55,955 nucleotides of DNA from Macrostomum lignano (GCA_002269645.1 NIVC01003479.1:1-55955), one strand, 5' to 3'; counted from the first letter of the stretch, positions 3,472-55,824 are shown. The notes: generated by a model not told the origin, from the letters alone. Program-made: numbers and translations.

Positions 3472-3564
3472 AATCAGCTTTTTCAGTATTGCGTTGAAGG
3501 CGATTTTCAGGGGGGGGGTTGGATTTTTAGTGGGAGTTGAAGGTGATTATCAATGGGGTTGAAA

Positions 3565-11924: not shown

Positions 11925-12084
11925 CACTTTTCAGATCTCTGATTATTGTTGACTGACAGCTGACTTGAGGCTATTGGACACGCAGACTAGTGAAAGACTG
12001 AAAGCTGGAAAATAATCTGAAAGTGCAAACAATTAAGGAGGAGATTAATTAAAGAACATAAATATACATCCCAACTCATGGACA

Positions 12085-13344: not shown

Positions 13345-14040
13345 CGAAAATCCCAAAACTAAGAATCCCATTCTGCCAGAAAAAATCCCAAAACTAAGAA
13401 TCCCATTCTGCCAGAAAAAATCCCAAAACTAAGAATCCCATTCTGCCAGAAAAATCCCAAAACTAAGAATCCCATTCTGCCAGAAATAATCCCAAAACTA
13501 AGAATCCCATATTCTATCTAAAAATCCCGAAACTAAAAATCCCATTCTGCCAGAAAAAAATCCCAAAACTAAGAATCCCATATTCTATCTAAAAATCCCA
13601 AAACTAAGAATCCCATTCTGCCAGAAAAAATCATAAAAATAAGAATCTCATTCTGCCAGAAAAAAATCCCAAAACTAAGAATCCCATTCTGCCAGAAAAA
13701 ATCCCAAAAATAAGAATCTCATTCTGCCAGAAAAAAATCCCAAAACTAAGAATCCCATTCTGCCAGAAAAAATCCCAAAACTAAGAATTCCATTCTGCCA
13801 GAAAAAATCCCAAAACTAAGAATTCCATTCTGCCAGAAAAATCCCAAAACTAAGAATTCCATTCTGCCAGAAAAAATCCCAAAACTAAGAATTCCATTCT
13901 GCCAGAAAAATCCCAAAACTAAGAATTCCATTCTGCCAGAAAAAATCCCAAAACTAAGAATCCTATTCTCCCCGAAAAATACCAAAACTAAGAATCTCAT
14001 TCTCCCCGAAAAATACCAAAACTAAGAATCCCCATTTTTC
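13345..14040. repeat. Minisatellite, ~35-bp unit AAAATCCCAAAACTAAGAATCCCATTCTGCCAGAA
   Basis: Tandem array downstream of the PK-like stop. Confidence 0.95.
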
Positions 14041-14153
14041 CAAAAAATCCTAGGTCTCACAAAACAAGTTTCCAGTAAGTAAAAGTTCAGTTCAACAACT
14101 TCCCTCAAAAAAGGTTTGATTCAATCTTACGCGCACAGAACACTGCTCAAAAA

Positions 14154-17100: not shown

Positions 17101-20100
17101 GCGGCTTATGCCGCATCGAGTCCAACATTTGGGCGGCAACCACTGCAGGCTTTTTGGCCGCATTGGCGTGCGCAATGACGGACTTCTGGGCTAGGAATAC
17201 TTTCTCAATTGGCAGGTTGCGGCCGAGCTCGCCGCGGTCCACAAACACTCCGTCGGCTACGGATATAATATCGGCGAGGCTGATGGGGCGAGGGGATAAA
17301 TGTCAGTTAGGGATTTATTATATAACGTTACCCACCGTACATTCCTTTCAGATCTTCTATTCCTGCCTTTCTCTGTCAGCCAATGGTAGAAGAGGCTGCT
17401 GGGTCTAGCTGCATCACAGATTAGGAATGAGGGCTAAACTATATATAGAGTGAAGGACTGACGCCATCATGTTCAAACTGAAGATTGCCATTTTTGTCTA
17501 TTCTTGAAAATGAGACTCTCTGCTTTGAAAGTAATTTCAGTTAGCTGTTGTTCACAAAGTACCGTACTACCATTTTTGAAAGAGAGGTGCCATTTTCGAA
17601 GGAAGAGTTGCCATTTTTGAAGGGAGACTTGCCAGTTTCAAAGGATGAGTTGCTACTTTTGAAGGGAGAGGTGCCATTTTAAAGTAGAGGTGTCATCTTT
17701 GAAGGGACACGTGCCATTTTTAATAGAGAGGTGCCATATTTGAAGGAGATGCCATTTTCGAAGGAAGAGTTGCCATTTTAGAAGGGAGAGGTGCCATTTT
17801 TTAAAAGAGATATGCTATTTTTGAAGGAGATGCCATTTTCAAAGGAAAAGTTGCCATTTTTGAAGGGAGGGGTGCCATTTTTAAAGGAGAGGTGCCATCT
17901 TTGAAACAGAAGTGCCATTTCTGAAGGGCGAGGTGCCAGTTTTGAAGGAGACGTACCATTTTTTATTGAGTGCCATTAATAAAGGAAGAGATGTCACTTT
18001 ATTGAATGCCATTTTTGTTAATAAGTGCCACTTATGAAAAGAGCGGTGCCATTTTTGTTCAGTGCCATTTTTGAAGGGAAATGTGACATTTCAGATTAAA
18101 AAACTGCCGCATTAAGCGTTGATTTAAGTTCGATTCTACGATTCTAAAATTCCATTAAGCATTAATCAAAATATGTACTTTTAGTTTTCTTGTAACTAAA
18201 ACACCCAGTATCTCACTTCTTCAAGCCGTCCGAAGACTCGATGCGAGCCAGAACTTTCGTGTTCAGCGAGAAGGGGCCCAGCACTTTTCGAATTTGAGTG
18301 ATGGCCAGTCCCGACTCTGCGAAGCCGCAGCAGACAATGTCCACCTGTGGAGATTCAAATAATTTGGTGGGGAATGTACTTCATGGTGATGCTAGGCGGG
18401 GAATGTACATTGTGGGGTGGGTGATGCTAGGCGGGTAATGTACATTGTGGGGTGGGTGATGCTACGCGGGGTGAGCGGGGCACTTATATTAGAGACGTAT
18501 GCACATTGTGCGATTGTAATGTTTGGCGGGGAATGCGAGTCTCAGTTGTGGGATGTTGGGTGAGGTAAGAAAATACTCTAAAAAGGAGTTCACTAAAGGA
18601 AAATTGGCGCTCGAAAATATACGAGAGTAAAGAGACCAAAAAGAACATGATAAGCTATTATATAACAACTTGCTCGAAATCGCAAGAGAGCGCTATGCTT
18701 CAATACATTATATGCAATAATTCGCTTATCTAGATTCCATTTTCGTAGTTAACCATGAAGTTTTCCATCGAGTAATTACAGTGTTACGCAATAAGATAAG
18801 AGATACTTCAAACACAGAACTCGGCAATGATTAGACTAACGAGGGGTTGCCAACGTGTAAGCCTATTTAGCTCGTAAATTCAATTGTGCATACAAAAAGC
18901 TGTAAACCGGGTGTAACTCGTAGGCCCCCAAATTATGGGTGAGATATAAAGGGATAGTTAGATGGGCCAGCAACTGAGGATCTGGGAGGCTGGGCCAGCA
19001 ACTGAGGATCTGGGAGGCTGGCCCAGCAACTGAGGATCTGAGAGGCTGGCCCAGCAACTGAGGATCTGGGAGGCTGGCCCAGCAACTGAGGATCTAGGAG
19101 GCTGGCCCAGCAACTGAGGATCTGAGAGGCTGGCCCAGCAACTGAGGATCTGAGAGGCTGGCCCAGCAACTGATGATCTGAGAGGCTGGCCCAGCAACTG
19201 AGGATCTAGGAGGCTGGCCCAGCAACTGACACTCTGGGAGGCTGGCCCAGCAACTGAGGATCTGGGAGGCTGGCCCAGCAACTGAGGATCTGGGAGGCTG
19301 GCCCAGCAACTGACACTCTGGGAGGCTGGCCCAGCAACTGAGGATCTGGGAGGCTGGCCCAGCAACTGAGGATCTGGGAGGCTGGCCCAGCAACTGAGGA
19401 TCTGGGAGGTTGGCCCAGCAACTAAGATAAATTTCAGAAATTATTCTAAAGGGACCTAGGGAGCGAAATGATTATAAATATATAAAGAATGTGGCCTAAG
19501 GACAGATAAATTAAAAAAAGAATCTTGCTCGCAAAATAATACTAATGGATACGTGAAGTAGGCATAGATAAAAATCTTGAAATTACAGAATAGCTTGCAG
19601 TTATTCCGCCATAGCAGTAAGAGATGATATATATTTCATATGCATACAACGCGGTATAGGTTTCATGTACTTTTAATAAATACAAACAGACGTCCGAAGA
19701 CTGTAAGGATGAAGGCAGCACAGAAATGGACGAAATACACTGGAGGCAGATGGTAAGCGGCAGAGATTAAGGCAGGCGGATGCGGTGATTAGAAAATGCG
19801 CAGAGACGGATCCCGTGGCAATAAGGGGAATTAAACAGATTAAAGGCAGCTTATGCGCCACATACTGCCTAGTTGTGAAGTCACTCTGTTGGTAACCATC
19901 AGCTCACTCTATAGGCAACCAACAGGTCACTCTATTGGCAACCAACAGGTCACTCTATTGGCAACCAACAGGTCACTCTATTGGCAACCAACAGGTCACT
20001 CTATTGGCAACCAACAGGTCACTCTATTGGCAACCAACAGGTCACTCTATTGGCAACCAACAGGTCACTCTATTGGCAACCAACAGGTCACTCTATGGGT

Positions 20101-23100
20101 AATCATCAGGTCACTCTATGGGTAATCATCAGGTCACTCTATGGGCAACCATCAGGTCACTCTATGGGCAACCATCAGGTCACTCTATGGGCAACCATCA
20201 GGTCACTCTATGGGCAACCATCAGGTCACTCTATGGGCAACCATCAGGTCACTCTATGGGCAACCATCAGGTCACTCTATGGGTAATCATCAGGTCACTC
20301 TATGGGCAACCATCAGGTCACTCTATGGGCAACCATCAGGTCACTCTATGGGCAACCATCAGGTCACTCTATGGGTAATCATCAGGTCACTCTATGGGCA
20401 ACCATCAGGTCACTCTATGGGCAACCATCAGGTCACTCTATGGGCAACCATCAGGTCACTCTATGGACAACCATCAGCTCACTCTATAGGTAATCATCAG
20501 GTCACTCTTTAGGTAATCATCAGGTCACTCTTTAGGTAATCATCAGGTCACTCTATAGGTAATCATCAGGTCACTCCATAGGTAATCATCAGGTCACTCC
20601 ATAGGTAATCATCAGGTCACTCTATAGGTAATCATCAGGTCACTCTACATGTATAGGCAACTATCAGGTCACTCTATAGGATACAATCAGGTACTAGTAC
20701 TAGTGTGCCTACTAGTAATCATAACCCATGTAATTTCGTTATACTATATTCTAAAATATTTTACCACTGTAATCAATGAGATAGATCTTCATGGCAAGTT
20801 AGCAAATGACATCAATCAATTGCAATAATTATACATCCCCGGTTGGCCATTTCGTGACTTCTCTAACTAGGAAAAAAGTTTTTTTTTCCTGTCGAGTTGG
20901 GAAATTGCCGGGACTGTATTAATCTAATTAACTCAGCACTGGCCATAATAATAATAGAATGCTAATAGAAATCATATTGATCTGAGTGCGTGAACTGTAT
21001 GGATGCTTAGAGATGATATAGAATGGGATAGAGATAGAGAGGTAGAGATAGAAGGGGATAGAGATAGAGAGGTAGAGATAGAAGGGGATAGAGATAGAGG
21101 TAGAGATAGAAGGGGATAGAGATAGAGAGGTAGAGATAGAAGGGGATAGAGATAGAGAGGTAGAGATAGAAGGGGATAGAGATAGAGAGGTAGAGATAGA
21201 AGGGGATAGAGATAGAGAGATAGAGATAGGATAGGATAGAGATAGAGATAGAGGTAGAGATAGAATGGGATAGAGATAGAGGTAGAGATAGAATGGGATA
21301 GAGTTAGAGATAGAGGTAGAGATAGAATTGGATAGGGATAGAGGTAGAGATAGAAGGGGATAGAGATAGAGGTAGAGATAGAAGGGGATAGAGATAGAGA
21401 GATAGAGATAGGATGGGATAGAGATAGAGGTAGAGATAGAATGGGATAGAGATAGAGATAGAGAGATAGAGATAGAATAGGATAGAGATAGAGATATAGG
21501 TAGAGATAGATTGGGATAGGGATAAAGGTAGAGATAGAATGAGATATAGGTAGAGAGGTAGAAATACAATGGGATGTAGGTAGAGAGGTAGAGACAGAAT
21601 GCCTGTACCTGATTCTCCACCGCGAACAGCAGATCCTGTTTGTACTTCTCAGCCACAGCGTATCGATATTCGGCCATCCTGGGCAGCCGGACAACACGAG
21701 AGCTCTGCAGAATGCCGCCCTGCTCAACTAGGCAGCGAATGCTGCCAGTTAGGGACGCTGAAAATAGGAAATCAGATTAGAATCAGGGATTAATGAGCTG
21801 CAGCATATTGCCTTTTTATTACAGCTGGAAGCCTGTTTCTTGGAAAAATATGTCATAGATAAGACATCGACACGAGGCACTGAAGAAACTCTACTGCATT
21901 CGTACACCTCATGCTAATGATGTAGCATTTCTCGTAAACTAATTTTCGTTTACATGACTGAATGAAATTTGAAGAAAAATAAATCAATTAAACTGCGTTA
22001 CACTCAGGGCACGAGTGAAGTCAAACTGTAATGGATACACGCTACATACTACTGAAAATATATCTTACATTCATAATTTATGCATAGTTTGCGGCATGCG
22101 TTGTTCAATATTGATAACAAATTAAAAATGATTCTTTCAGACTACAATCAATTTAATACCTATTTATGATCAATCAATCAATCAATGTAAATCAATTTAC
22201 ATACAAATTTAACTGATCATTTTAGCACAAGTAGTATGTATTCATTTCCAAAACATTTTTATTTCCATTTATCACAAACCTGAAGGACGACTTGGTGAAT
22301 AGTTGGTGAAGCCTGCGATTATGATATTTCATTAGTTTGCCTTTGGCTTTGCTTTGAAATTAACAAGTGCTGAGTTATAAACAAAGTAAATAATAATGTA
22401 TTATATTTCGGCTATTGCGCGGCGCATCTGAAGGCTACGTACGGCTGTTCAGTCCAAAGACTGGGGGGTCGCCACCATCAATTACCCCAGCTAATGCTGG
22501 CACCCATTTTACAGCTGGGTGAACTGAAGCAATGCAGAGTTAAGTGTCCTGCTCAAACGACACAAATTGTTCCGAGTTGGAGCAGGAATTGAACCCCCGA
22601 CCTTCAAGTAGAGTCCGACGCTCTAACCACTAGGCTAAAACCACTTTAAATATAATTTAAAGAGTAGAGTAACAGTGTTTAACACATACTGATACAATTA
22701 TAAACAATTTTTTGAAGATTAAGTGATAGTAAATACACAAAGACTTTCTAATCGTTAGGCACATACACTCTAAATTTCTCACCTTTCTCCGAGCAATCAG
22801 CATCACTGTGCCGTCATCAATATCGATCCTATCGCCAACATTGATAGCGTGAAAAGATTTACGCCAATAGGCGGTATCGATGTACAGGTGCTCAGCTGTG
22901 CAGTCGTCTTTGTAGGCTTCATCAACTGTGATGGTGACGAATTCGCCTTCGGAGACTTTGAACGAGCCGTTGACAGCGCCGCTAACCTGTCCGGTACGCA
23001 GGGTTGGCGCGGTGATGTCCACGGCCACGGCCACCATGTAGGAGTCCATGGACTCCGAGTTCAGTTTGGCCTCTTCGGCGCGTACAGTTTTGATGAGTTG

Positions 23101-26100: not shown

Positions 26101-27555
26101 CTGTATCTTTACCTAATTCGATCCCAATTCTACATATTTCTAGTTTTAAAATTCTATTTGTCCCTTGATGTGATTATATTCATCCAATATCTATATTTAT
26201 ATTTCCTCTATCAGATAAAAAATTTAAATACGTGTAATTTAAATCTAACTTGTTAATTAACAAAAGTAGGTGACAAACAAAACAGAGCCGAACAAAAATA
26301 TTTGCAATAGACAAAGAAAGCTAAACAATATTCTTCGGTGCTACTGTTCAGGAGAAAATATCCATTACCCTTCCCTGTCGTATCTTATGCATCGCTATGT
26401 ATGTCAGACTGCGCACCTTGCAGACGCTCCCTACCCCCGCCTGACTCATGCCATCCCATTAGCTATATCCTTTGCAGGAAAAAAGGCGTGGATTTTATTT
26501 TACTACACTGCACATTCACTGATTCAGCCGGGCAATAAAGTGCATGCAACAGTAATGGCAGAAACTGGCTATATCAACATGTGCACCTATGTGTATTACT
26601 TAGCTTGTACAAGTTATAGTAAATCTCCGCAATGTTTAGTAGACTGCAGACAAACAGTCGATATTATATGTGTGTTTAGGTTAAAGTTCTTTGCGAACTT
26701 TTTATGCACGCTTCTAAAAACTGGGGATAACGTATACTTCCTGTTTCTGAACTTGGTAAAGTAATTATCCTATCCTAGTACGGGAGCTGAGTCATGCTTT
26801 GAAATACGTCAAATAACATGATACTAGCACACGAAATAATGCTGCAAGGCCAAGAAATGAGGATCTGGGAGGCTGGCCCAGCAACTGAGGATCTGGGAGG
26901 CTGGCCCAGCAACTGACACTCTGGGAGGCTGGCCCAGCAACTGACACTCTGGGAGGCTGGCCCAGCAAATTACACTCTGGGAGGCTGGCCCAGCAACTGA
27001 CACTCTGGGAGGCTGGCCCAGCAACTGACACTCTGGGAGGCTGGCCCAGCAACTGAGGATCTGGAATGTTGGCCCAGGGATCTGGGATGCTGGCCCAGCA
27101 ACTGAGGATCTGAGAGGCTGGCCCAGCAACTGACACTCTGGGAGGCTGGCCTAGCAACTGAGGATCTGGGAGGCTGGCCCAGCAACTGAGGATCTGGGAG
27201 GCTAGCCTAGCAACTGAGGATCTGGGAGGCTAGCCCAGCAACTGAGGATCTGGGATGCTGGCCCAGTAACTGAGGATCTGGGAGGCTGGCCCAGCAACTG
27301 ACACTCTGGGAGGCTGGCCTAGCAACTGAGGATCTGGGAGGCTGGCCCAGCAACTGAGGATCTGGGAGGCTGGCCCAGCAACTGAGGATCTGGGAGGCTG
27401 GCAACCCACACAAGACTTCAGCAGAACCCAGAACGGTCAGAACGTCTGCTAAATCCGAGAGCCGCTCACCTGGACACCTTCGACAGGGTGGGCGTCGGCA
27501 GCGTCAGCTGTACACCGCCGAACTGGAAAGCGTGGCTCGAGTCGTCTTGTTGCAT
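14154..27555 (-). CDS. PK: Pyruvate kinase-like protein (divergent, probably catalytically impaired), 9 exons: complement 27470..27555, 25242..25450, 23897..23988, 22783(or 22767)..23109, 21609..21757, 18217..18344, 16976..17279, 15149..15461, 14154..14485
   Basis: PK-family motifs in order: [77 protein letters not shown]...TNTVR. GT-AG junctions are phase-consistent except exon 4/5, which needs the weaker GTATGT donor 16 nt downstream or an indel/micro-exon. Confidence 0.9.
14595..15056. repeat. Intronic minisatellite, 33-bp unit GGAGGCGAATCTATGGGATGTGGGATCTCTATA
   Basis: Tandem array in PK intron 8. Confidence 0.95.
15480..15800. repeat. Intronic minisatellite, 21-bp unit GAGTGAGATAGATCAGACAGA
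   Basis: Tandem array in PK intron 7. Confidence 0.9.
16420..16925. repeat. Intronic minisatellite, 28-bp unit GACCACCGACACATCAAAGCGACACATA
   Basis: Tandem array in PK intron 7. Confidence 0.93.
17560..18085. repeat. Degenerate ~20-bp repeat, GTGCCATTTTTGAAGGAGAG-like
   Basis: Recurrent GCCATTTT..GAAGG motif in PK intron 6. Confidence 0.8.
18965..19424. repeat. Minisatellite, 28-bp unit CTGGCCCAGCAACTGAGGATCTGGGAGG (array 1 of 3)
   Basis: PK intron 5; same unit at 26855-27403 and 40760-41880. Confidence 0.96.
19880..20690. repeat. Minisatellite, 23-bp unit CAGGTCACTCTATGGGCAACCAT
   Basis: PK intron 5; related array at 23245-23830. Confidence 0.95.
21010..21600. repeat. Purine-rich minisatellite (GATAGAGATAGAGGTAGAGATAGAATGG-like)
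   Basis: Start of PK intron 5; reverse complement of the array at 25475-26115. Confidence 0.93.
22450..22643 (-). mobile_element. tRNA-derived SINE, copy 1
   Basis: Minus strand reads A-box TAGCCTAGTGG, B-box GGTTCAATTCC, then a body (..AGGACACTTAACTCTGCATTGCTTCAGTTCACCCAGCTGTAAATGGGTGCCAGC) shared with 42265-42461. Confidence 0.8.
23245..23830. repeat. Minisatellite, 23-bp unit CATCAGGTCACTCTATAGTTGAC
   Basis: PK intron 3; variant of the 19880-20690 family. Confidence 0.93.
24690..25205. repeat. Minisatellite, 20-bp unit CCCTGACACCCTATTCATTT
   Basis: PK intron 2 tandem array. Confidence 0.9.
25475..26115. repeat. Pyrimidine-rich minisatellite (TCCCATTCTATCTCTACATCTATCTCTA-like)
   Basis: End of PK intron 1; reverse complement of 21010-21600. 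Confidence 0.93.
26855..27403. repeat. 28-bp CTGGCCCAGCAACTGAGGATCTGGGAGG minisatellite (array 2 of 3)
   Basis: PK intron 1; includes the GACACT variant also seen in array 1. Confidence 0.96.
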
Positions 27556-36368: not shown

Positions 36369-42937
<6,569 letters not shown>

Positions 42938-43934
42938 GTTTTATTAGATTTAAGCACCACCTGTGGCACAATAGATATTTAATAATAAGGAAGGCACTAA
43001 ATTACTGTTGACTAAACTAACGTTGACAAACTTTTTTTAAATATCGAATTGCGCGCCGCTAGCAACTAAATTGGCGTTTTGGCTGCGCAATTTTTTTGAG
43101 TAAACTGCAATATCACATGTGGCACAGGAATGGGAGAGGCCAATGATTTAAACATGCAGTAATGTATACAAAAAATAACTAAAATACAAAAAACTATTTG
43201 GGATCCCACCTTATAAGCTTAAGTTTACTTAATGGTCCCTAATTGTGCCCTCGCTTGTTCTCTACTATTTCAGGTCCAATTTTTGTACATTTTCCCCCAA
43301 ATTCAGCTTCCTGGTGTCAATGTGAGCAGAATGGCATATAATTTGTGTACATAGGTTACTTGGGCTTCACTTTATGAGCTTAAGTTGACAGGCTTTTTTG
43401 TATGCATCTAGCATATATAAGGTATTTTGGCTACAATGTATTTTAGTATTTATAGCCTACCTTGACTATTGTGATAGAATTAAAGAAGTATGATAACAAC
43501 TTAGAAAAAGTAGACTGCTTTAGCTGCTAATATAATTAAAACAGAAAATGACATTTTAGGTTAGAGCTACAATGCCAAAGTTAAGAATACTATTTACTTG
43601 GTATTACTTGGTAGGATACTTGTGGTCTAGGGGATTCTTTCAATTTAGGGGGAATGCTTATTATCTTTGTTAAGACTTTATTTTGTTGTATCTTTTTGTT
43701 ACTTTTAGAAGCAAGAGATTTATAGGAAGCATCTTTGTCAATTAAAATTTACTTAAATAAGGCAATTTATAAAACTGAAGAAAGAAATAGTTCTTAAGAA
43801 AATGTGCTTTTCAATGGATTAGCATGAATATAAGTTTTTCTCTTTGCTTATTGGGCACCCTGAAAGGGGCATTAGATTGATATTCATTCACTTAAATATA
43901 CTATTTGAAAGATGGGTAATTTTTTTTATTTATA

Positions 43935-44970
43935 TAAGGGGTATGCAATAAGTTTCTGTATATGTAAAGTAGAAAAGTGATATACACAATTTGGCATAGC
44001 AGGTTTTATATATTACTTGTGATTATATTTATACAATTTTAGACAAATTCACTCTATAATGCCTCTGCAACTACCATTCACACAAAAAAGCATATCCCCC
44101 TAACATTGAAAATTCACAATGGAGCTCAACAGAGGTCATTGCAAAGCAATGATTTAGTATAGCTACAAAAGTGGTCTAAGGTAACAAAAGAGCTTTGAGT
44201 GACTTCAAGTGGCTTTGAAAGACCTTCTAGGACTATAGTTTTGAAGTGGTTGGGCAAATTTTGATGTGGCCAATGGAGTCTAGATGATAAATAGTGCAGC
44301 CATGACCCTACTTCTATAGCAAGCAAAGAGGATAATTGCTTTTATTCAGGCAATGTTAGAGGATTATACCAGGGTAATTGTTACTTAAATAGAGACAAAA
44401 ATGGGGATCTTATTGGGAGCTATCTGCATTATCCTGCACTTAAGGCTGAACCTAAACAAGATTTCTATATACCAGGTGCTTTATCATTTTAAAAAGGATA
44501 AAAGGAGGCTTAGATGGCTTTGTGCCATGCTATGCTCAATAGACTTAATGGTGGTTGCTTAAACCTAATCTAAAAAATTATCAGTAACAAATCCTGGATC
44601 TATAGTTTAGGCCTAGAGACCAAGTGTAAATAACAGTTAGCCTAGTGGACATTAGTTGGAAGCACTTTACTATTGAAGCTACAATAAAAGCATAGTGGCA
44701 AAGCAGATATTGGCCATTTTTGAGACAAAAGCTAGAAGCAAAAGCAAAAAGCAAAATGCTGCAATTGAGGCTTTTGTTAGGCATGTTGAGGAAATGCCAA
44801 GTTTAAAGTAGTCTAGTGGCTTCAATGGTTTGAAAGTCAGTTCAAGTGGTTTAAAAAGATGTAATAGTGCATAGACTTTTTTGGAAAGTATCTTGAAAAT
44901 GTGACTATTAATTGCTCACTAATCTAATTATTTTAGTTTGTGCATCTAGAAGCTTATTATATACTCCTTA
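43935..44970 (+). mobile_element. Mariner (Tc1/mariner) DNA transposon, internally deleted and heavily C>T/G>A mutated; transposase remnant 44119..~44904
   Basis: 23-bp TIRs at 43935-43957 (TAAGGGGTATGCAATAAGTTTCT) and 44948-44970 (rc TAAGGAGTATATAATAAGCTTCT). Piecewise translation: MELNRGHCKAMI, PSRTIVLKWLGKF*CGQWSLDDK, ILHLRLNLNKIS, IISNKSWIY (=IVTGDESWIY), AAIEAFVRHV, WFKKM**CIDFFGKY (=WFERMQKCI..GEYF). Confidence 0.88.
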
Positions 44971-45510
44971 CAAAATTCTAAATTTTACATAATAGGTTAT
45001 CATATCTTTGGAATTATCATTGACATAATAAATATAATTATATATACAATACCCAAAAGTCCAAATCATGGTAGGAATACACTAGAATGAAAATTTGAGT
45101 TGTTTTAATTATATAAGTTAAAAAAATTTTATATATGCCAACTTTTATGATAATATAGTTTTTTATAAATAACAAGGGCTTTACAGAACTTTAAAGTGTC
45201 TATTTTGGAAATCTAATTTTTTGGTTGATTTTTAGATAAAAAGTTTTGGTATTGCCTTTACTTTTTTGGATAGAAGCAATTATTATCTGTACTTTTTTCC
45301 AAGTTAAATTATTATTTTTTATTGATATTTCCAATCATTTCTAAAGGAACTTTTTTGATTGATATTTAAATATATTATATATACTACATTAAGCCTAAAC
45401 TTGACTTTTTTGCATGTCAACTATGTTTCTATATATATTAGTTATTGTTATACCTAAAATTTCTATACTATATACCTAGTGTAGGCAATGGCTAGAGTTC
45501 TAGCATTAGA

Positions 45511-45769
45511 ACCCATTTTCTAATAGCTATAAATCTGGTAGTATTATCCTAGTAGTGCATTTTATGGATTTAATATACAAATAATAATATAAATTATAAC
45601 CTATTTTAATGGGTAGTTGATATTAAGATTTTGTTTACAATAAGATCAAAATAATATAATAAGATTCAAAACAGATACTGAGATAGGCCTACTTAAAATA
45701 TTCAAAGATTTTATTAGTAGATAACTATCTATAGGAGACTACTAGATCCATAGCTATTAGAAAATGGGT
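45511..45769. repeat. Fold-back/MITE-like element with 31-bp inverted arms (45511-45541 / 45739-45769)
   Basis: ACCCATTTTCTAATAGCTATAAATCTGGTAG vs rc ACCCATTTTCTAATAGCTATGGATCTAGTAG; the 3 mismatches are all A/G. Confidence 0.65.
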
Positions 45770-45956
45770 TTTTGTTGCTAAAACTCTTAATCTCAAAAAA
45801 TCTCAAAAAAAATTTCAAATAACACTTTTAGCACAAAATCTTGCTTTTTAATTGGCCTAGGCCCTACTTTTTGTTTGAATAAGTTAATTCATTGATTCAA
45901 GTGAACATATTCTAGGAAATAAGAATAACCTTGAACTAAATAAACAAATCAATTTG

Positions 45957-46638
45957 TAGAGCTGTCACGAGATCTTGACGAGACAAGATTCAAGACAAGA
46001 TCTCGACATTTTTTCTCGTCTTGAAAAATCTCAAATTTTGTTAAGAAATTTGAGACAAGATTCAAGAATTTTTCTGATACCTTTTTTCAAAAGCTTTTAA
46101 GTGATAAGATATAAAAAGGGGAGCAACTTTTTTATATAAATACAACTGTTTGTTGTAACACGCTTGATAGGGCAATTTTCAAATGGTAAAATCTAGCCAA
46201 TGTCGAGCAGTTTTAGTTATTTAACGAACATCGTTATATACAAGTTTGCATTGCATATGCGCTCTTTTAGTTATCATTACAGTTTTGTGGCAAGGTGTAT
46301 CATAGCAGACTCGAAGACAATCTACACAGGTCTTTTGATGAATTAGTAATAGACATAGTAGGGCCAAGGGTCTATATGCTACAAGCATAAATGCTTATGA
46401 ATAAATAGCAAAGAATTAAAACTAGAATTAAGAAAGTATTCTGGAAAATCTAAAAAATATATTTTATAATTGTTTCTTATCAAGAAATTTAAGACAAGAT
46501 AAGAGCAAGACAAGATGCAATTCTGAAATATATTTTTTTAGATTTACTTTGTCTTGTCTTGTCTCAAAATTCTCAACTTATAAGCTTTTCTCATCTCGAA
46601 TCTTGTCTCGAATAAAGTCTCTAATTTTGACAGCTCTA
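45957..46638. mobile_element. Non-autonomous hAT-type MITE, 682 bp
   Basis: Perfect 11-bp TIRs TAGAGCTGTCA/TGACAGCTCTA and perfect 8-bp TSD TCAATTTG (45949-45956, 46639-46646); subterminal AGACAAGA/TCTTGTCT repeats. Confidence 0.92.
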
Positions 46639-47255
46639 TCAATTTGGCATACTTGCCTAATTTAGTCCTTTCAAAGTTGCTTCTAAACAATTTTCATGGT
46701 AGGGGCCTATACTTGAAATGTAAAAACTTCTTATTAATCTCACCCAACTTTTCTTGACTCCCAACATTAACTACCAACAATCAACATGGTTGGGAATCTA
46801 AAAAAACACTTGGGTCCCAACCAAGTCGAGATCGGGATCAGAATCCAAGTTGGGCTCTAGTGTGCACCCAGCATGATCTGGACTATGGTAGCCATTAACC
46901 ATCCCTGGTTTAAGTAAGTATAGCCTATACCAAGGTTGTCAGTAAGGTAAAAATGTCAGAATTTTCCAGCATAAAGGCCACCTTCTGGACTATGATAAGC
47001 ATATAATTATATTACAGTTTTAATTATTAGCTATCATAATATTATATATTAGTAATATAGGCTACAGATAATAAGAGTAGCTAGCAGTAAGCCACATAAA
47101 TTGGAAAATGTGATGTGATGTCAAATTCAGATAAAAAATACACCATTATAAATAAGCAGATAGATTTTTCTAGTCATGTTATTTTTTCTTGCCATGAGGC
47201 CACTGAGGCCGTGACAATAAATAGTCAATATTTCTAATTATTATAATTACTCTTA

Positions 47256-47514
47256 GGGCCTTTTCATATTGCTTGCTCTGGTTCCAGAACCAGAACCAAT
47301 TTGTGAAGTATAACTTTTTGTCTCCATAACTAGATAGAGATACATACTATAAAGTTTTATTATTGAATGACAATCGCCAAGAAGAAAGTGAAAAATTGTG
47401 CTAAGTTATGTTGTTAAGGCAGTAAAATATTAACAGAGTTTAATAGTTATACTGCTGTTTTTCTTGGAATTCCAAACCGATTCTGGTTCTGGAATTGGTA
47501 ATATGAAAAGGCCC
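47256..47514. mobile_element. PIF/Harbinger (Tourist-like) MITE, 259 bp
   Basis: Perfect 15-bp TIR GGGCCTTTTCATATT / AATATGAAAAGGCCC, TTA TSD on both sides, inverted subterminal TTCCAGAACCAGAA. Confidence 0.9.
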
Positions 47515-48904: not shown

Positions 48905-49537
48905 TTATTTATTTTCGCTTCGATCAATCACTAAGCTGCTCTGTTGGACTTCTGCACTCTTTCGCTCATCTCTCGATCGATTCAATCGATACGAGTAAAG
49001 GGTATCGAATCCCAGCGAAACCAAATTGTCAAACGTAACTCTCAGGCGGGTTGGCAGAAAATAAAAGTTAAACACCTGAGCGGCTGTCCAAACCGTGGCC
49101 TCGTACTTGTAAATCGTGAGACCGGACTCAATTAGATCGTCGCGTACCTCTTCTAGCGTAGACTTGCGCAATAAGCCCAACGCCAGAACGTACAACGTGA
49201 TGTACAATGGCGAGAAAAAGATCGTGTCAAACAGTAGCTTATAAGCCAGAGAGCGGCCCGTTCTACCAACGAAACGCCGGTCCAAGTACAGGTACCAATA
49301 GTGCGACAGCGGGCCCAGCATCAGGCCGCACAGGCTGATGGTGGCCGTGCGACTCCAGCTGTGAGTTCGCCTATCATTATTGGTCGATTCCAGTCGCTGG
49401 CTGATGATGTCGCCGAGGCAGGAGCTGACGCCGCAGATAACGCAGTTGGCGGCTAGGAGGTGACACGTCAGCAAACGGTTGGCTCTGCGACGACTCAGCC
49501 GGTAGACGGCTCGGAGACGGCCGAAGCGACGGAACAA
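48905..49537 (-). CDS. Mpv17/PMP22-family membrane protein (MPV17L2-like); no genomic ATG, begins at a splice acceptor
   Basis: Family motifs LGDIISQRLE, SWSRT...G..LGPLSHYWYLYLDR, KLLFDTIFFSPLY, VWTAAQVFNFYFLPTRLRV. The ORF starts directly after TTCTACAATTTCAG; the N-terminus is Arg-rich. Confidence 0.88.
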   Translation of the reverse strand: MFRRFGRLRAVYRLSRRRANRLLTCHLLAANCVICGVSSCLGDIISQRLESTNNDRRTHSWSRTATISLCGLMLGPLSHYWYLYLDRRFVGRTGRSLAYKLLFDTIFFSPLYITLYVLALGLLRKSTLEEVRDDLIESGLTIYKYEATVWTAAQVFNFYFLPTRLRVTFDNLVSLGFDTLYSYRLNRSRDERKSAEVQQSSLVIDRSENK

Positions 49538-49729
49538 CTGAAATTGTAGAATTTCGTAGAATGATTAGCTCGAATGCCTTTACAATTGAGAGCTTAGCGT
49601 GGCTTAAAAAGGCTTAGAGTGTCATCAACTAATCCAGAGATTTCAGGGTGTCTGACCGAAGATTTTTGGAGTTACGTAACGTAAGAGTTTCTTTGTTTTC
49701 AAGAGGGTTGTGCGGGCATCCCGGAGAAA

Positions 49730-51174: not shown

Positions 51175-54100
51175 TCACAGCCAAGCAGGAGTGGCCGGAC
51201 TCAAGCGCAGGGGTACCGCGCTGGAAACTCGATCTGTCTGCTGCTGTTGCTGTCTGCCCAACCCCGACCTGCTGGTGCTATTGTTGAGCAGTCGAATCGA
51301 CTCAAAGAACTCCGACCTATCCGGCGTTCTCAGTTGTTGAGCAAGACGGAAATAACAACTAGTAGCTATGGCTGAGTCCTCTGAAGATGCCGCTGCTGCT
51401 GCTGGTGCTACTGATGAAGATGAAGATGAAGAAGCAGCTTCCGCAGCAGAGGAAGTCGAGGCTGCTGTGGCGCCCGGAGAATTACGCCGATAGTGCAAAT
51501 TGGCGCCCAACGGGGTGCAGGACGGGCACTGAATGGAGCCTGGGCTGCCGCTGACGCTGCCTGATTGAATATGTGCGGTTTGAACATCACATGAACATCA
51601 TAGCGATTCTTAGATTGATCACTACTAATTGACAATTCTTCATCTGGAACCAATCAAACAATAATTCGAATGTCTTCGACACGAATAAACGCCATCAAAA
51701 GCTCAATTATCCCAACCTGGGATCTTCTAAGATGGCACAATGATCCTAATCCGGGATCTTCTAAGATGGCACAATGATCCTAATCCGGGATCTTCTAAGA
51801 TGGCACAATGATCCTAATCCGGGATCTTCTAAGATGGCACAATTATCCCAACCTGGATCTTCTAAGATGGCACAATTATCCCAACCTGGATCTTCTAAGA
51901 TGGCACAATGATCCTAATCCGGGATCTTCTAAGATGGCACAATCATCCCAATCTGGTATCTTCTAAGATGGCACAATCATCCCAATCTGGTATCTTCTAA
52001 GAAAGCACAATGATCCTAATCCGGGATCTTCTAAGAAAGCACAATGATCCCAATCTGGTATCTTCTAAGATGGCACAATTATCCCAATCTGGTATCTTCT
52101 AAGATGGCACAATTATCCCAATCTGGTATCTTCTAAGATGGCACAATTATCCCAATCTGGTATCTTCTAAGATGGCACAATTATTCCAATCTGGGATTTT
52201 TTAAGAAGATATAAATATCCCAATCTGGGATCGTCTAAGAAAAGACAAAAAATCCCAAACCAGGATCCAACAGTCCAGAGCTGCTCACCTCCCCTAGGAA
52301 CGCATCTGGAGTGGCAGGCGTGCCCGCAGCCTCGGAACAGCAGTACGCCACCGTTGCTACCGCCTGAGCTGCCGAAGGACGCCTCATCAAGCCGGAGGCC
52401 GCAGTTGGCGCAGCAGCAGCCGCCGGCGTCGCCGTTGGCCACCGCAGCCCGACGAGCCGATTGGCAGGCCTCCAGTAAGCGGAGATTTGCGTCTCTGTGC
52501 GCGATTATTGGCGTAAAAATCGGTATTATAATGGGGCTTTGGCCTGCATTAACTGCAGTTCATGCCACGCCAGCTCTCCTTTGTTCTTTGTTTGATTCGC
52601 CTGTCTCGCCTCTCCTCCTTTCACTTGATCATCCCTTTCCCTCCCTAACTTGGATATTCCCCCTCTATTGCGCCCACTTCCTCTCATGTCAAACTTCTTT
52701 CCAACTTTCTTCTTTTACTTCTCTATACCAGCTAATCCTTCCCCACTCTACCCTCCCTTCCCCACTCTACCCTCCCTTCCCGCTCTACCCTCCCTTCCCC
52801 GCTCTACCCTCCCTTCCCACTCTACCCTCCCTTCCCCACCCTACCCTCCCTTCCCCACTCTACCTCGTCTCTCTACTCTCTCCATTTTGCTCTGCACCCT
52901 CTAATTCCCCTCTCAATCCTCCAGTTTCCCTCTCAACCCTCCAATTCCCCTCCCCACCCTGCAATCCCCCTCTTAACCGTCCGATTCCCCTCTCAACCCT
53001 CCAATTCCCCTCCCAACCCTCCAATTCCCCTCCCCACCCTGCAATTCCCCTCTTAACCCTCCGATTCCCCTCTCAACCCTCCAATTCCCCTCCCAACCCT
53101 CCAATTCCCCTCCCCACCCTGCAATTCCCCTCTTAACCCTCCGATTCCCCTCTCAACCCTCCAATTCTCCTCTCAACCCACCAATTCCCCTCCCAACCGT
53201 CCAATTCCCCTCCCCACCCTCCGATTTCCCTCTCAACCCTCCGATTCCCCTCCCAACCCTCCAATTCCGCTCTCCACCTTCCCACCCAGAGCACCCACCG
53301 TCCAACCAGTCCGGCGCACGTGGCCAGCAGGGTGCTCTCGTATCGACAAGAGTCCAGCAGGTGCACCAGCAGGTCCAACAGTTCACCAACCCGATCAGCC
53401 GTATAAGCCGGATCGGACAGCAACCGTCTCAGCACGGACGGAAGCGAGACGCCGCTGCCAGCCGTCATTCGAGCTACCAAATTTCTGCAGGCCAATCGGA
53501 CCAGTTCTTGATCTTTGTCGGCTTCGTCGACGTTTCCGTCAACGTGTACTCGTCGAGCTCGTTGAAGCACCCGATCGAGCAATTGAAACCAGAGCTGCTC
53601 AGCGGCTGCAGCATCTGCTGGCTTACTGTCGTCCTGCTGCAGCCTAGCCGCGGCTCTTGAGCAGGTGTCGGCGCATTTTCCCAGCCAGTCCAATACGGCA
53701 CTGTTGCGATCGTCGGCGCTTGTCGACGCCGATGAGGAATTCCAAGCGGCGTCGAGTCGGTTGAGCAGAACGTCAAGAGCTCGGTCTGGCTGATTGGCCA
53801 GCTCGTAGCAGATTGCCTGGGCTTCGGCTTGACTGTTCGGGTCCAAGTGCTGGGATTGTTTCATAGGGGGATTGCTATTATGAACTGTTCGTAGTTGCTA
53901 CGACTTGGTTGCTATGCGTTGGTGGTTGCTACGACTTGGTTGCTATGCGTTGGTGGTTGCTACGACTTGGTTGCTATGCGTTGGTGGTTGTTATGGCTAG
54001 GTTGCTATGCTTTGGTGGTTGCTATGGCTTGGTTGCTATGCGTTGGTGGTTGCTACGACTTGGTTGCTATGCGTTGGTGGTTGCTACGACTTGGTTGCTA

Positions 54101-55824
54101 TGCGTTGGTGGTTGTTATGGCTTGGTTGCTATGCGTTGGTGGTTGCTATGGCTTGGTTGCTATGGCTTGGTTGCTATGCGTTGGTGGTTGTTATGGCTTG
54201 GTTGCTATGCGTTGGTGGTTGCTATGGCTTGGTTGCTATGCGTTGGTGGTTGCTACGACTTGTTTTTTATGCGTTGGTGGTTGTTATGGCTAGGTTGCTA
54301 TGCGTTGGTGGTAGCTACGACTTGGTTGCTATGCGTTGGTGGTTGTTATGGCTAGGTTGCTATGCGTTGGTGGTTGCTACGACTTGGTTGCTATGCGTTG
54401 GTGGTTGTTATGGCTTGGTTGCTATGCGTTGGTGGTTGCTATGGCTTGGTTGCTATGCGTTGGTGGTTGCTACGACTTGTTTTTTATGCGTTGGTGGTTG
54501 TTATGGCTAGGTTGCTATGCGTTGGTGGTAGCTACGACTTGGTTGCTATGCGTTGGTGGTTGTTATGGCTAGGTTGCTATGCGTTGGTGGTTGCTATGGC
54601 TTGGTTGCTATGCTTTGGAGGTTGCTATGGCTTGGTTGCTATGTGCTGGTGGTTGCTATGGCTTGGTTGCTATGCGTTGGTGGTTGCTACGACTTGGTTG
54701 CTATGCGTTGGTGGTTGTTATGGCTAGGTTGCTATGCGTTGGTGGTTGTTATGGCTAGGTTGCTATGCGTTGGTGGTTGCTACGACTTGGTTGCTATGCG
54801 TTGGTGGTTGTTATGGCTTGGTTGCTATGCGTTGGTGGTTGCTACGACTTGGTTGTTATGCGTTGGTGGTTGTTATGGCTAGGTTGCTATGCGTTGGTGG
54901 TTGCTATGGCTTGGTTGCTATGCTTTGGAGGTTGCTATGGCTTGGTTGCTATGTGCTGGTGGTTGCTATGGCTTGGTTGCCATGCTTTGGTGGTATGGCT
55001 TGGTTGCTATGTGCTGGTGGTTGCTATGACTTGGTTGCCATGCTTTGGTGGTATGGCTTGGTTGATCCACTTTGGTGGTTGTTATGGCTTGGTTGCTATG
55101 TGTTGGTGGTTACTATGGCTTGGTTGCTATGCTTTGGTGGTTGCTATGGCTTTGTTGCTGTGTGTTGGTGGTTGTTTTAGGTTGGTGGTTGCTATGGGTT
55201 GGTTTCTTTGCTGCTATGGGTTGATTGCTTGGTTGCTATGGGTTGTTTGCTTAGTTGCTATGGCTTGGTTGCTAAGGATTGGTGGTTGCCAAGGTTTGAT
55301 TGCTATTTGTTGGTTTTTGGTATGGTGCTGTTATGGTGTAGTAGTAGTTGCTATGGCAGATTAGGTAGATTGCACTGGGTAAATTTTGCATGATGACTAA
55401 AGTAGCCAAAGCTTCAACACGGTGTTTCAATTCAGTAAACTGCAAATGCTAGGCAGTCACCTTGATCAATGCCTTCGGTTGAACCTCAGTCCAGACTGCA
55501 GAGCATCAACCAGTCTAGCTGGAGCCTCGCTAGCCATCAGTCTCAGATAGGTCTCAGTCAGGCTGTCCTCATCGTCGCGCGTAAAGCAAAAGCCGAGGAG
55601 GCCAGGCTGATGGGCACGGTGGCCGAGGCGGTTGCGGCGGCGGCAGCGGCGGCCACGGCCGCAGTTTCTCTGTCCTCCTGTCTGAGCATGGAGAAATACG
55701 CGCCTAGCAGGCTGTAGCATAGAGAAGGCTGGTCCGCCAGACGTCGGGCGGCATTCGACAGGCGCTCGCCAAGGTGCTGCGTCACGAGCAGGACGGTCTT
55801 GGAAGCGTCTGTTGCCACTAGTCG
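51175..55824 (-). CDS. VPS8: Vacuolar protein sorting 8 homolog, 3' part (5' end outside window): exons ~55461..55824, 53299..53849, 52289..52494, 51175..51560
   Basis: LWFQLLD, VLRRLLSDPAY...LLDSCRYESTLLATCAGL and a RING (CANC...CGHACHSRC...QCPSC) match the VPS8 C-terminus. The three distal junctions are phase-consistent. The most 5' exon has two apparent frame changes. Confidence 0.85.
51710..52245. repeat. Intronic minisatellite, ~34-bp unit GGATCTTCTAAGATGGCACAATGATCCTAATCCG
   Basis: Tandem array in the last VPS8 intron. Confidence 0.93.
52740..53285. repeat. C-rich intronic minisatellites (CTCTACCCTCCCTTCCC; ACCCTCCAATTCCCCTC)
   Basis: Two adjacent C-rich arrays in a VPS8 intron. Confidence 0.88.
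53895..55260. repeat. Compound minisatellite of GGTTGCTATGCGTTGGT / GGTTGCTACGACTT / GGTTGCTATGGCTT units
   Basis: Fills a VPS8 intron; explains all ORFs 53895-55393. Confidence 0.94.

What the first reader, a model, noticed from the sequence alone, without database searches (positions are those of the whole stretch)
43935..44970. Mariner transposon with RIP-like C>T/G>A hypermutation in an animal genome
Seen: a TIR-bounded mariner with no CpG; its two 23-bp TIRs differ at 4 positions, all transitions. Against a typical mariner transposase (recalled from memory, ancestral codons inferred), most changes are explained by C>T or G>A on both strands. Examples: catalytic GDE read as SNK (AGT AAC AAA from GGT GAC GAA), MQQC as M**C (TAA TAG from CAA CAG), W>* (TAG), M>I (ATA), S>L (TTA), T>I, E>K, R>C/Q/W/*. 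Many of these sit in CpA/TpG and some in CpT context, not only CpG. Established: ordinary animal 5mC decay is CpG-focused, whereas dense bidirectional C>T at CpA (plus CpG/CpT in some species) is the signature of fungal repeat-induced point mutation, which needs the RID methyltransferase-like protein. Inference: this lineage may have a repeat-targeted mutagenic defence, either non-CpG methylation plus deamination or an AID/APOBEC-like deaminase acting on dsDNA. To my knowledge this is not described in animals.
Basis: partly seen in the sequence, partly recalled or inferred. Interest (0 to 1): 0.88.

Follow-up and report, generated by a model that had tools for sequence, protein, structure and literature searches.

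The report
Flatworm mariner with sustained C-to-T hypermutation
A dead mariner transposon in the flatworm Macrostomum lignano sits in a small AT-rich, CpG-free block of DNA that has gained C-to-T mutations at CpG, CpA and CpT sites about 5 to 9 times faster than its relatives elsewhere in the genome; this looks like a by-product of local DNA methylation, not a fungal-style repeat-induced mutator.

Summary
Window 43935-44970 is a TIR-bounded, internally deleted mariner-like copy with no CpG. Against a consensus of 12 GC-rich family copies it has 224 substitutions in 963 sites, and 158 of them (71%) are C>T or G>A, split evenly between strands. The genome is Macrostomum lignano, not a contaminant.

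The RIP reading is only partly supported. Most family copies are unmutated (GC 0.50, CpG o/e 0.6), including pairs 94-99% identical. Only two independent insertions are hypermutated, and both lie in 2-4 kb AT-rich, CpG-free blocks that extend beyond the TIRs.

The homeologous contig C413 gives an internal clock. Since the genome duplication, non-CpG C>T is 5-fold higher in the AT-rich copies (CpA odds ratio 9.4, CpT 4.8, CpC 1.0). Transversions and A/T transitions are unchanged. C>T and G>A changes show no strand clustering. AT-rich DNA with normal CpG is not affected.

The genome has three C5-methyltransferase gene types and no APOBEC_N or NAD1 match.

Best explanation: stable, locus-specific cytosine methylation by DNMT-type enzymes, including CpA/CpT sites, followed by deamination. 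Methylation itself was not measured.

The parts
43935..44970 (+). Dead, internally deleted mariner-like (DD34D) transposon copy. GC 0.347, 0 CpG, about 33% of its original C/G positions changed to T/A.
   Evidence: Its own translation no longer matches any Pfam family.
43935..43957 (+). Left terminal inverted repeat. The first two bases read TA where the family consensus has CG.
44948..44970 (-). Right terminal inverted repeat. It differs from the left TIR at 4 of 23 positions, all transitions.
44119..44900 (+). Remnant of the transposase reading frame, starting at ATG 44119. It has 11 stops in 202 comparable codons and several frameshifts. About 270-490 bp is missing near 44733-44751 relative to full-length copies.
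43300..45950 (.). Continuous CpG-free, AT-rich block (GC 0.22-0.36) that contains the mariner and extends about 630 bp to its left and 980 bp to its right. About 24 CpG would be expected in the flanks at o/e 1.
   Evidence: Homeolog transitions per site rise from 0.01-0.02 to 0.06-0.07 at about 43500.
43600..43885 (.). MITE-like short repeat in the left flank, with at least 1711 candidate copies in the genome and 78-84% identity to the copies scored.
45484..45787 (.). MITE-like repeat with its own inverted ends in the right flank, with at least 469 candidate copies and 72-77% identity to the copies scored.
45951..46640 (.). Abundant 685-bp repeat (at least 2238 candidates, 90-93% identity). 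It is absent at this site in the homeolog C413, so it inserted after the duplication. It still has 12 CpG (o/e 0.75).
46641..47400 (.). Continuation of the CpG-poor AT-rich block (CpG o/e about 0.2) beyond the young insertion. CpG returns to normal from about 47500.
36369..40739 (-). MRCK-like kinase gene (kinase, C1, PH_MRCK and CNH domains in one long exon). It served as the internal clock: 4-fold degenerate sites differ by 3.8% from the homeolog.
42230..43581 (.). Neighbouring non-coding DNA (GC 0.41, 40 CpG), used as an internal control. Divergence from the homeolog is 4.7%, with 27 transitions and 36 transversions.

Best explanation
The element is an old, dead mariner copy inside a block of about 3.5 kb of transposon debris, between the MRCK-like and Mpv17-like genes of Macrostomum lignano. 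This block, and similar 2-4 kb blocks elsewhere in the genome, carries a stable, heritable mark that raises the C-to-T rate on both strands. CpG sites have been driven to extinction. CpA sites, especially CAG, are raised about 9-fold and CpT sites about 5-fold. CpC sites are not raised.

The most likely mark is cytosine methylation in the germ line or stem cells, laid down by the DNMT1/DNMT3 enzymes this flatworm retains, and including non-CpG (CpA>CpT) methylation of silenced transposon clusters. Spontaneous deamination of 5-methylcytosine then gives T.

Shown here: the spectrum, the context, the extent, the persistence and the locus specificity of the excess. Inferred: that the mark is methylation, and that DNMT3 writes it. 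On this reading the inactivation of the transposon is a by-product of silencing, not the work of a homology-triggered mutator.
For: 1. Magnitude and specificity. Per-site GC>AT transitions are 0.27-0.34 in the four AT-rich copies and 0.03-0.09 in ten GC-rich copies. GC>AT transversions are about 2-fold higher. AT>GC changes are unchanged.

2. Internal clock. Contig C413 is the homeolog of the window. Since the duplication the mariner pair has 72 transitions and 22 transversions. The adjacent non-coding DNA has 27 and 36 (p = 2e-5), with equal transversion rates.

3. Non-CpG rates after the duplication. C>T per non-CpG site is 0.124 and 0.146 in the two AT-rich pairs, against 0.024-0.036 in three GC-rich homeolog pairs. 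The odds ratios are 9.4 for CpA, 4.8 for CpT and 1.0 for CpC.

4. Steady rate. The excess is of similar size (about 3- to 4-fold) before and after the duplication.

5. Regional extent. AT-rich copies lie in flanks with GC 0.23-0.38 and CpG o/e 0-0.65, below 0.5 in seven of the eight flanks measured. GC-rich copies mostly lie in flanks with CpG o/e near 1. The zero-CpG zone runs from 43300 to 45950. A non-mariner AT-rich block (L014/L015) also has 2.7-fold more transitions per C/G site.

6. Not AT-richness alone. AT-rich DNA with normal CpG in the same homeolog pair has 0.017 transitions per C/G site, against 0.153 in the CpG-poor class (p = 9e-6).

7. Compartment signature. In 32 AT-rich CpG-poor windows the o/e values are CG 0.12, CC+GG 1.31 and GC 1.59. 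That is what this context bias would leave behind.

8. The 3'-base dependence, with CAG at 0.41 against 0.16-0.25 for other CAN (p = 9e-5), is typical of DNMT-type enzymes.

9. Genes. Three C5-methyltransferase gene types are present. The literature says M. lignano keeps DNMT1 and DNMT3 and has low-level 5mC (PMC11292947, PMC9246332).

10. Independence. The two lineages share 47-53 mutated sites against 38-43 expected from context alone, so they were hit independently.
Against: - Methylation at this locus, or anywhere in this genome in a non-CpG context, was not measured.
- To my knowledge, non-CpG methylation is generally regarded as negligible in invertebrates.
- The detailed spectra rest on only two independent mariner insertions (four copies) plus one non-mariner block. 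Further hypermutated copies were seen only as stop-codon counts in a table.
- GC>AT transversions are also about 2-fold higher, which deamination does not explain.
- The young 685-bp insertion inside the block still has CpG o/e 0.75.
- A GC-rich mariner fragment that directly abuts an AT-rich block (L014/L015) is not affected. The mark therefore has sharp limits whose cause is unknown.
Confidence: 0.5

Rival explanations
1. An active, RIP-like or deaminase-based genome defence. In this reading an enzyme (a RID-like DNMT or an AID/APOBEC-like deaminase) is directed to transposon copies and deaminates cytosines in double-stranded DNA.
For: - The size of the effect: a third of all C/G positions changed.
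- The CpA preference resembles fungal RIP.
- Other family copies carry 7-10 TAG/TAA/TGA stops over about 325 codons with no frameshift. That means many point changes and few indels.
- The TpA/ApT ratio is raised to about 1.0-1.1 in the blocks, against 0.8 elsewhere.
Against: - Near-identical repeats are untouched: family pairs at 94-99% identity and 10 copies of another mariner at 99.9-100%.
- The flanks and a non-mariner block are affected.
- The rate is steady across the duplication rather than a burst.
- There is no strand clustering (z between -0.6 and +0.2).
- The RIP substrate index is 1.48.
- No APOBEC_N or NAD1 match was found (the NAD1 control rang nowhere, so that negative is weak).
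- Only three DNMT gene types are present.
- The context depends on the 3' base, not the 5' base.
Confidence: 0.1
2. A regional mutational or fixation bias without methylation. In this reading, AT-rich, late-replicating or heterochromatic DNA that melts easily suffers more deamination of ordinary cytosine, and GC-biased gene conversion is absent, so any GC-rich insert decays towards the local AT-rich equilibrium.
For: - GC>AT transversions are also about 2-fold higher.
- Transversions per site are somewhat higher in the AT-rich CpG-poor class.
- Cytosines with a 5' G or a 3' C are the most protected.
- The element's GC (0.35) is approaching that of its flanks (0.24-0.32).
Against: - CpC sites are not raised at all (odds ratio 1.0) while CpA sites are raised 9-fold. 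A domain-wide melting effect should raise all cytosines.
- AT-rich DNA with normal CpG in the same homeolog pair shows no excess.
- AT>GC changes are not higher in the GC-rich copies, which argues against gene conversion.
- The complete loss of CpG points to a CpG-directed mark.
Confidence: 0.25
3. There is nothing special. In this reading the AT-rich copies are simply much older insertions, or an ancestrally AT-rich subfamily, that decayed under the genome's ordinary AT-biased mutation spectrum.
For: - The family is old and has no intact copy.
- Distances of GC-rich copies to the consensus include subfamily divergence, so the comparison before the duplication is confounded.
Against: - The comparison after the duplication has the same start time for the mariner, its neighbours and the MRCK gene, and still shows 3.5-fold more transitions with equal transversions.
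- GC-rich copies that also predate the duplication (L014/15, L005/20, L004/7) show 0.031-0.045 GC>AT transitions per C/G site, against 0.137-0.160.
- The direction of change is fixed by the stop codons.
- The two lineages carry largely different mutated sites.
Confidence: 0.05

Closest known systems
Methylation-driven C>T decay of silenced transposons (5mC deamination), as in vertebrates, plants and some invertebrates; for example PMC7431005
   Same: - CpG is lost completely, and TpG+CpA is in excess in the element (o/e 1.20).
- DNMT1/DNMT3-type genes are present.
- Changes are strand-symmetric, unclustered and accumulate steadily.
- The affected unit is a silenced transposon cluster rather than a sequence family.
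   Different: - Most of the changes are outside CpG. After CpG was exhausted, CpA and CpT sites still mutate 5-9 times faster than in other copies.
- To my knowledge such a non-CpG component has not been described for an invertebrate.
- Methylation itself was not measured here.
Fungal repeat-induced point mutation (RIP; RID/DIM-2 dependent)
   Same: - C>T and G>A changes occur on both strands, with a preference for CpA over CpT over CpC.
- Many stop codons arise, and coding capacity is destroyed with few indels.
- The products are AT-rich blocks with sharp borders and raised TpA/ApT.
   Different: - It is not triggered by duplication: near-identical copies are untouched.
- It is a steady rate over a long time, not bursts.
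- CpG is the strongest target.
- There are no strand runs.
- The substrate index is not lowered.
- The flanks are affected.
- No extra RID-like methyltransferase is evident.
AID/APOBEC editing of retroelements in vertebrates (PMC4866542)
   Same: Cytosine-to-thymine hypermutation that inactivates mobile elements.
   Different: - APOBEC editing acts on single-stranded cDNA, so it is strand-biased, clustered and set by the 5' base (TC, CC, WRC).
- Here the element is a cut-and-paste DNA transposon and both strands are hit equally.
- There is no clustering, the 3' base sets the rate, and no APOBEC_N or NAD1 match was found.
Non-CpG (CpA, especially CAG/CAC) methylation by DNMT3 enzymes in mammalian oocytes, embryonic stem cells and neurons (from my own knowledge)
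   Same: The context order CpG > CpA > CpT > CpC and the CAG preference match the mutation contexts seen here.
   Different: It is known as an epigenetic mark in vertebrates, not as a driver of heritable hypermutation of transposon clusters in a flatworm.

Membership tests
Tc1/mariner superfamily, mariner-like (DD34D) element | Short terminal inverted repeats of about 25-30 bp | tested here: met
   The ends at 43935 and 44970 are inverted repeats with 19 of 23 positions matching. The family consensus ends match each other.
Tc1/mariner superfamily, mariner-like (DD34D) element | TA target-site duplication | tested here: inconclusive
   TA lies directly 5' of the element (43933-43934), but the 3' flank reads CA. 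The site is heavily mutated.
Tc1/mariner superfamily, mariner-like (DD34D) element | Transposase with an N-terminal helix-turn-helix and a DDE/D catalytic domain with DD34D spacing | tested here: met
   The consensus protein hits HTH_48 (40 bits) and DDE_3 (29.6 bits), both above cut-off. There are 34 residues between the second and third acidic residues. Transposase_1 (PF01359) scores only 17 bits, below its cut-off. The window copy itself matches no family.
Fungal RIP | GC>AT transitions dominate, on both strands | tested here: met
   158 of 224 substitutions: 80 C>T and 78 G>A.
Fungal RIP | All duplicated sequences above a length and identity threshold are hit | tested here: not met
   Family pairs at 94-99% identity and ten 99.9-100% identical copies of another mariner are unmutated.
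Fungal RIP | Mutation comes in bursts and stops once copies have diverged; runs on one strand | tested here: not met
   The excess is of similar size before and after the duplication. The runs test gives z between -0.6 and +0.2.
Fungal RIP | Depletion of CpA+TpG relative to ApC+GpT (substrate index below about 1) | tested here: not met
   The index is 1.48 in the element and 1.32 in AT-rich CpG-poor windows.
Fungal RIP | A RID/Masc1-type methyltransferase | tested here: inconclusive
   Three C5-methyltransferase gene types were found, each in three copies. They could not be classified because no more genome sequence could be fetched.
AID/APOBEC hypermutation | Rate set by the 5' base (TC, CC or WRC), with strand-coordinated clusters | tested here: not met
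   The 5' effect is only avoidance of G. The 3' base dominates. There is no clustering.
AID/APOBEC hypermutation | An AID/APOBEC-like deaminase gene in the genome | tested here: not met
   No match to PF08210 or PF18778 in six-frame searches. This negative is limited: other deaminase clades were not searched, and the NAD1 control rang nowhere.
Methylation-driven decay of silenced transposons | CpG depletion in the affected DNA while the rest of the genome keeps its CpG | tested here: met
   No CpG over 43300-45950. CpG o/e is 0.12 in AT-rich CpG-poor windows and about 0.75-0.85 elsewhere.
Methylation-driven decay of silenced transposons | DNMT1 and DNMT3 present | tested here: met
   PF00145 matches in three gene groups. 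The literature states both enzymes are kept (PMC11292947, PMC9246332).
Methylation-driven decay of silenced transposons | The locus is methylated in the germ line | not testable with these tools
   No methylome data were available. Wasik et al. 2015 is not held in the library.
Methylation-driven decay of silenced transposons | Excess confined to CpG | tested here: not met
   The non-CpG excess is 5-fold, with odds ratios of 9.4 for CpA and 4.8 for CpT. It is therefore filed as a variant.

The most novel reading that the evidence does not exclude
Macrostomum lignano has a heritable, locus-specific system that marks transposon clusters with non-CpG as well as CpG cytosine modification. That system, or an enzyme recruited by it, drives RIP-scale C-to-T hypermutation. 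It would create a distinct AT-rich, CpG-free genome compartment and act as a mutational transposon-inactivation pathway not described in animals.
Probability: 0.3. Interest if true: 0.8.

Novelty: new variant of a known kind. Interest (0 to 1): 0.58.

Why it matters
If the mark is non-CpG methylation, this flatworm would be an invertebrate in which DNMT-type enzymes mark transposon clusters outside CpG strongly enough to rewrite their sequence. That would bear on three things:
- when non-CpG methylation arose in animals;
- how AT-rich compartments form, including perhaps the very AT-rich genomes of other flatworms;
- whether animals can inactivate transposons by mutation as well as by silencing.

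M. lignano is a transgenic, RNAi-amenable laboratory model with a recent genome duplication. The duplication gives a built-in clock, so the question can be tested directly. There is also a practical point. Such copies fall below the detection limits of protein-family and repeat-library searches, so the transposon content and ages of this genome are probably misjudged.

Tried and rejected
- **Contaminant or chimera.** Rejected. The block is identical on contigs C3479 and C271, and homeologous on the 625-kb contig C413, with the same flanking genes.
- **Ancestrally AT-rich subfamily.** Rejected by the origins of the stop codons and by the two lineages having largely different mutated sites.
- **Simply older copies.** Rejected by the internal clock after the duplication.
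- **GC-biased gene conversion.** AT>GC changes are not raised in the GC-rich copies.
- **UV-type damage.** There is no preference for a 5' pyrimidine.
- **Transcription-coupled asymmetry.** C>T and G>A counts are equal.
- **Mariner homology hidden in the AT-rich flanks.** A purine/pyrimidine-collapsed local alignment found none beyond 90-180 bp.
- **The same pattern in other repeat families.** An all-against-all search of the roughly 280 kb held found only this family.
- **Other copies of the flank repeats among held sequences.** None were found.
- **Fetching more of the genome** (the rest of C413, the stop-rich copies, the partial copies).
- **Wasik et al. 2015,** the only reported methylation data for this species, is not held.
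- **Literature searches** for RIP-like or non-CpG hypermutation in animals found only fungal work and APOBEC editing of retroelements.

Full report
**What is there.** Window 43935-44970 is a 1036-bp element with inverted ends. The ends differ at 4 of the first 23 positions, and all four differences are transitions. The element has GC 0.347 and no CpG, where about 30 would be expected. Its reading frames are full of stops, and its translation matches no Pfam family.

A DNA search of the window's own 764-Mb assembly found the family. Most copies have GC 0.47-0.52 and CpG o/e 0.55-0.69. Four copy groups are AT-rich and nearly CpG-free:
- the window copy and its 100% duplicate on C271;
- C413:457222-458747;
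- C562;
- C1942/C998.

A consensus of 12 GC-rich copies encodes a mariner-like transposase. It hits HTH_48 of Mos1 at 40 bits and DDE_3 at 29.6 bits, and has DD34D spacing. Pfam Transposase_1 scores only 17 bits.

**Organism.** The long ORF at 36369-40739 on the minus strand has kinase, C1, PH_MRCK and CNH domains. It is 100% identical to a Macrostomum lignano protein. The assembly size and the frequent duplicated contigs fit this recently duplicated flatworm genome (PMC5704211, PMC10733133). The block is not a contaminant. It is identical on C271 and homeologous on the 625-kb contig C413, with the same neighbouring gene.

Against the consensus the window copy has 224 substitutions in 963 sites: 80 C>T, 78 G>A, 5 T>C, 11 A>G and 50 transversions. 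C>T frequency by 3' base is CpG 0.63, CpA 0.38, CpT 0.22 and CpC 0.18. Eleven stops in 202 comparable codons come almost entirely from CAG, CGA, TGG and CGG. The catalytic GGT GAC GAA now reads (deletion)GT AAC AAA. An equally diverged copy, L029, has an ordinary spectrum. With leave-one-out consensuses, the rates compare as follows.

| Class of change | AT-rich copies | GC-rich copies |
|---|---|---|
| GC>AT transitions per site | 0.27-0.34 | 0.03-0.09 |
| GC>AT transversions | about 2-fold higher | baseline |
| All other classes | about equal | about equal |

**It is not repeat-induced.**
- The window copy and the C413 copy share 128 of about 155 mutated sites, and their flanks are homologous. 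They are one insertion that was later duplicated. The C562 and C1942 copies form a second such pair.
- The two pairs share only 47-53 mutated sites, against 38-43 expected from context, so they were hit independently.
- GC-rich copies that are 94-99% identical to each other, and ten 99.9-100% identical copies of another mariner family, are unmutated. RIP would not spare them.
- The RIP substrate index is 1.48, not low.
- C>T and G>A changes are interleaved at random (runs test z between -0.6 and +0.2).

**It is regional.**
- AT-rich copies lie in flanks with GC 0.23-0.38 and CpG o/e 0-0.65 (seven of the eight flanks below 0.5). GC-rich copies lie in flanks with GC 0.36-0.59, most with CpG o/e near 1.
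- In the window the zero-CpG zone runs from about 43300 to 45950 and resumes at 46641-47400. That is well beyond the TIRs (Poisson p about 4e-5 for each flank).
- The flanks hold two MITE-like repeats and some apparently unique DNA. They are not mariner-derived.
- A 685-bp abundant repeat at 45951-46640 is absent from C413, so it is younger than the duplication. It keeps 12 CpG.
- The blocks around the other AT-rich copies are 2-4 kb long with sharp edges.

**It is a sustained rate, shown with an internal clock.** The window and C413 compare as follows.

| Segment | Divergence | Transitions : transversions |
|---|---|---|
| MRCK 4-fold degenerate sites | 3.8% | 17 : 9 |
| Non-coding 42230-43581 | 4.7% | 27 : 36 |
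| Mariner 43935-44970 | 9.1% | 72 : 22 |

The mariner and its non-coding neighbour have equal transversion rates. Their transition-to-transversion ratios differ with p = 2e-5.

Changes were then polarised with the consensus.

| Copies | GC>AT transitions per C/G site, after the split | Before the split |
|---|---|---|
| Two AT-rich pairs | 0.137 and 0.160 | 0.22-0.27 |
| Three GC-rich homeolog pairs | 0.031-0.045 | 0.06-0.08 |

By the time of the split the AT-rich copies had almost no CpG left, so the excess after the split is non-CpG. Non-CpG C>T runs at 0.124 and 0.146 in the AT-rich pairs, against 0.024-0.036 in the GC-rich pairs. The odds ratios are 9.4 for CpA (p = 2e-16), 4.8 for CpT (p = 2e-6) and 1.0 for CpC. 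Pooled over both lineages, CAG is the hottest non-CpG context: 0.41 against 0.16-0.25 for other CAN (p = 9e-5). A 5' G is protective.

**It follows CpG depletion, not AT-richness.** Aligned positions of the homeolog pairs were sorted by local composition.

| Local class | Transitions per C/G site |
|---|---|
| AT-rich, CpG-poor: window/C413 | 0.153 |
| AT-rich, CpG-poor: L009/L010 | 0.281 |
| AT-rich, CpG-poor: non-mariner block of L014/L015 | 0.075 |
| GC 0.40 or more (window/C413 and L014/L015 pairs) | 0.021-0.028 |
| AT-rich with normal CpG: window/C413 | 0.017 |

Among 489 windows of 500 bp, those with GC below 0.30 have a median CpG o/e of 0.12-0.21. Pooled AT-rich CpG-poor windows show o/e values of CG 0.12, CC+GG 1.31, GC 1.59 and TA 0.96. 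That is the residue this context bias would leave.

**How general it is.** A protein search with the consensus found more copies that span about 325 codons with no frameshift yet carry 7-10 TAG, TAA or TGA stops. Examples are C2359:23510-24496 and C2600:96017-97006. Some are at 52-55% identity and probably belong to other mariner families.

**Enzymes.** PF00145 finds three C5-methyltransferase gene types, each in three copies. This agrees with reports that M. lignano keeps DNMT1 and DNMT3 and has low 5mC of unknown pattern (PMC11292947, PMC9246332). No match to APOBEC_N or NAD1 was found. The second negative is weak, because the NAD1 control rang nowhere.

**Interpretation.** The data fit a stable, locus-specific mark on transposon clusters that raises cytosine deamination at CpG, CpA and CpT on both strands. 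A DNMT-type enzyme sets its rate by the 3' base, as seen here. An AID/APOBEC-type enzyme would not.

I judge methylation, including non-CpG methylation, followed by passive deamination to be the most likely cause (about 0.5). A methylation-free regional bias is second (0.25). It is weakened by the unchanged CpC rate and by the unaffected AT-rich, CpG-normal DNA. An active RIP-like or deaminase defence is possible but disfavoured (0.1). Ordinary ageing is largely refuted (0.05).

**Novelty.** Methylation-linked decay of transposons is known (PMC7431005), as are fungal RIP and APOBEC editing of retroelements (PMC4866542). Searches of the library found no report of a large, sustained, non-CpG, block-limited C>T excess in an animal. 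I file it as a new variant of a known kind. The main caveats are that the detailed spectra come from two independent insertions plus one other block, and that methylation was not measured.

Noticed in passing
window 1-55955, e.g. 5-827, 1846-2486, 3558-4185, 13347-14047, 19880-20692, 40764-41879, 53904-55204: The window is packed with minisatellite arrays of 15-46-bp units, about 40 arrays of 0.3-1.3 kb each. One unit (TGGCCCAGCAACTGAGGATCTGGGAGGC) recurs at 18963-19423, 26858-27402 and 40774-41879. The last of these lies directly upstream of, or within the 5' part of, the MRCK gene.
   Followed up: partly
window 45951-46640: A 685-bp repeat with more than 2000 candidate copies at 90-93% identity. 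It inserted after the genome duplication, since it is absent at the homeologous site on C413. Although it lies inside the CpG-free block it keeps CpG o/e 0.75. It would make a younger probe of the mutation rate.
   Followed up: partly
G000:C2359:23510-24496, C2600:96017-97006, C1206:246836-247813, C4191:18194-18952, C366:197706-198665: Mariner copies that align over about 325 codons with no frameshift but carry 7-10 TAG, TAA or TGA stops. This suggests point-mutation-dominated inactivation in further copies and probably in other mariner families. They were not fetched.
   Followed up: no
whole window versus G000:C271:~154800-210711 and G000:C413: Contig C3479 (the window) appears to be a redundant copy of part of C271, at 99.97-100% identity over all the stretches compared. 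C413 is the homeolog, at about 96% identity in the gene. Many loci occur in two or three near-identical contigs.
   Followed up: partly
L014 2250-3724 and L015 1-1200 (G000:C2452, C1104): A GC-rich, truncated mariner fragment directly abuts an AT-rich CpG-free block with a sharp border and is itself not hypermutated. The process therefore does not spread more than a few hundred bases. What sets the border is unknown.
   Followed up: partly
G000:C3325:72259-77864, C866:395550-400492, C112:237965-242078; C33:104621, C2943:55086, C2045:100952; C305:374945, C2545:29950, C3236:17441: There are three kinds of C5 DNA methyltransferase gene, each in three copies. They were not classified into DNMT1, DNMT2 and DNMT3.
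   Followed up: no
window 10530-11930 (-), 48905-49564 (-): Other genes in the window: an ankyrin-repeat ORF, and an Mpv17/PMP22-family ORF just beyond the AT-rich block.
   Followed up: no
L051-L060: The genome holds well over a thousand mariner transposase matches. Several families have many 99.9-100% identical copies and intact ORFs of 361-411 residues, which suggests recent or ongoing transposition alongside the hypermutated relics.
   Followed up: no
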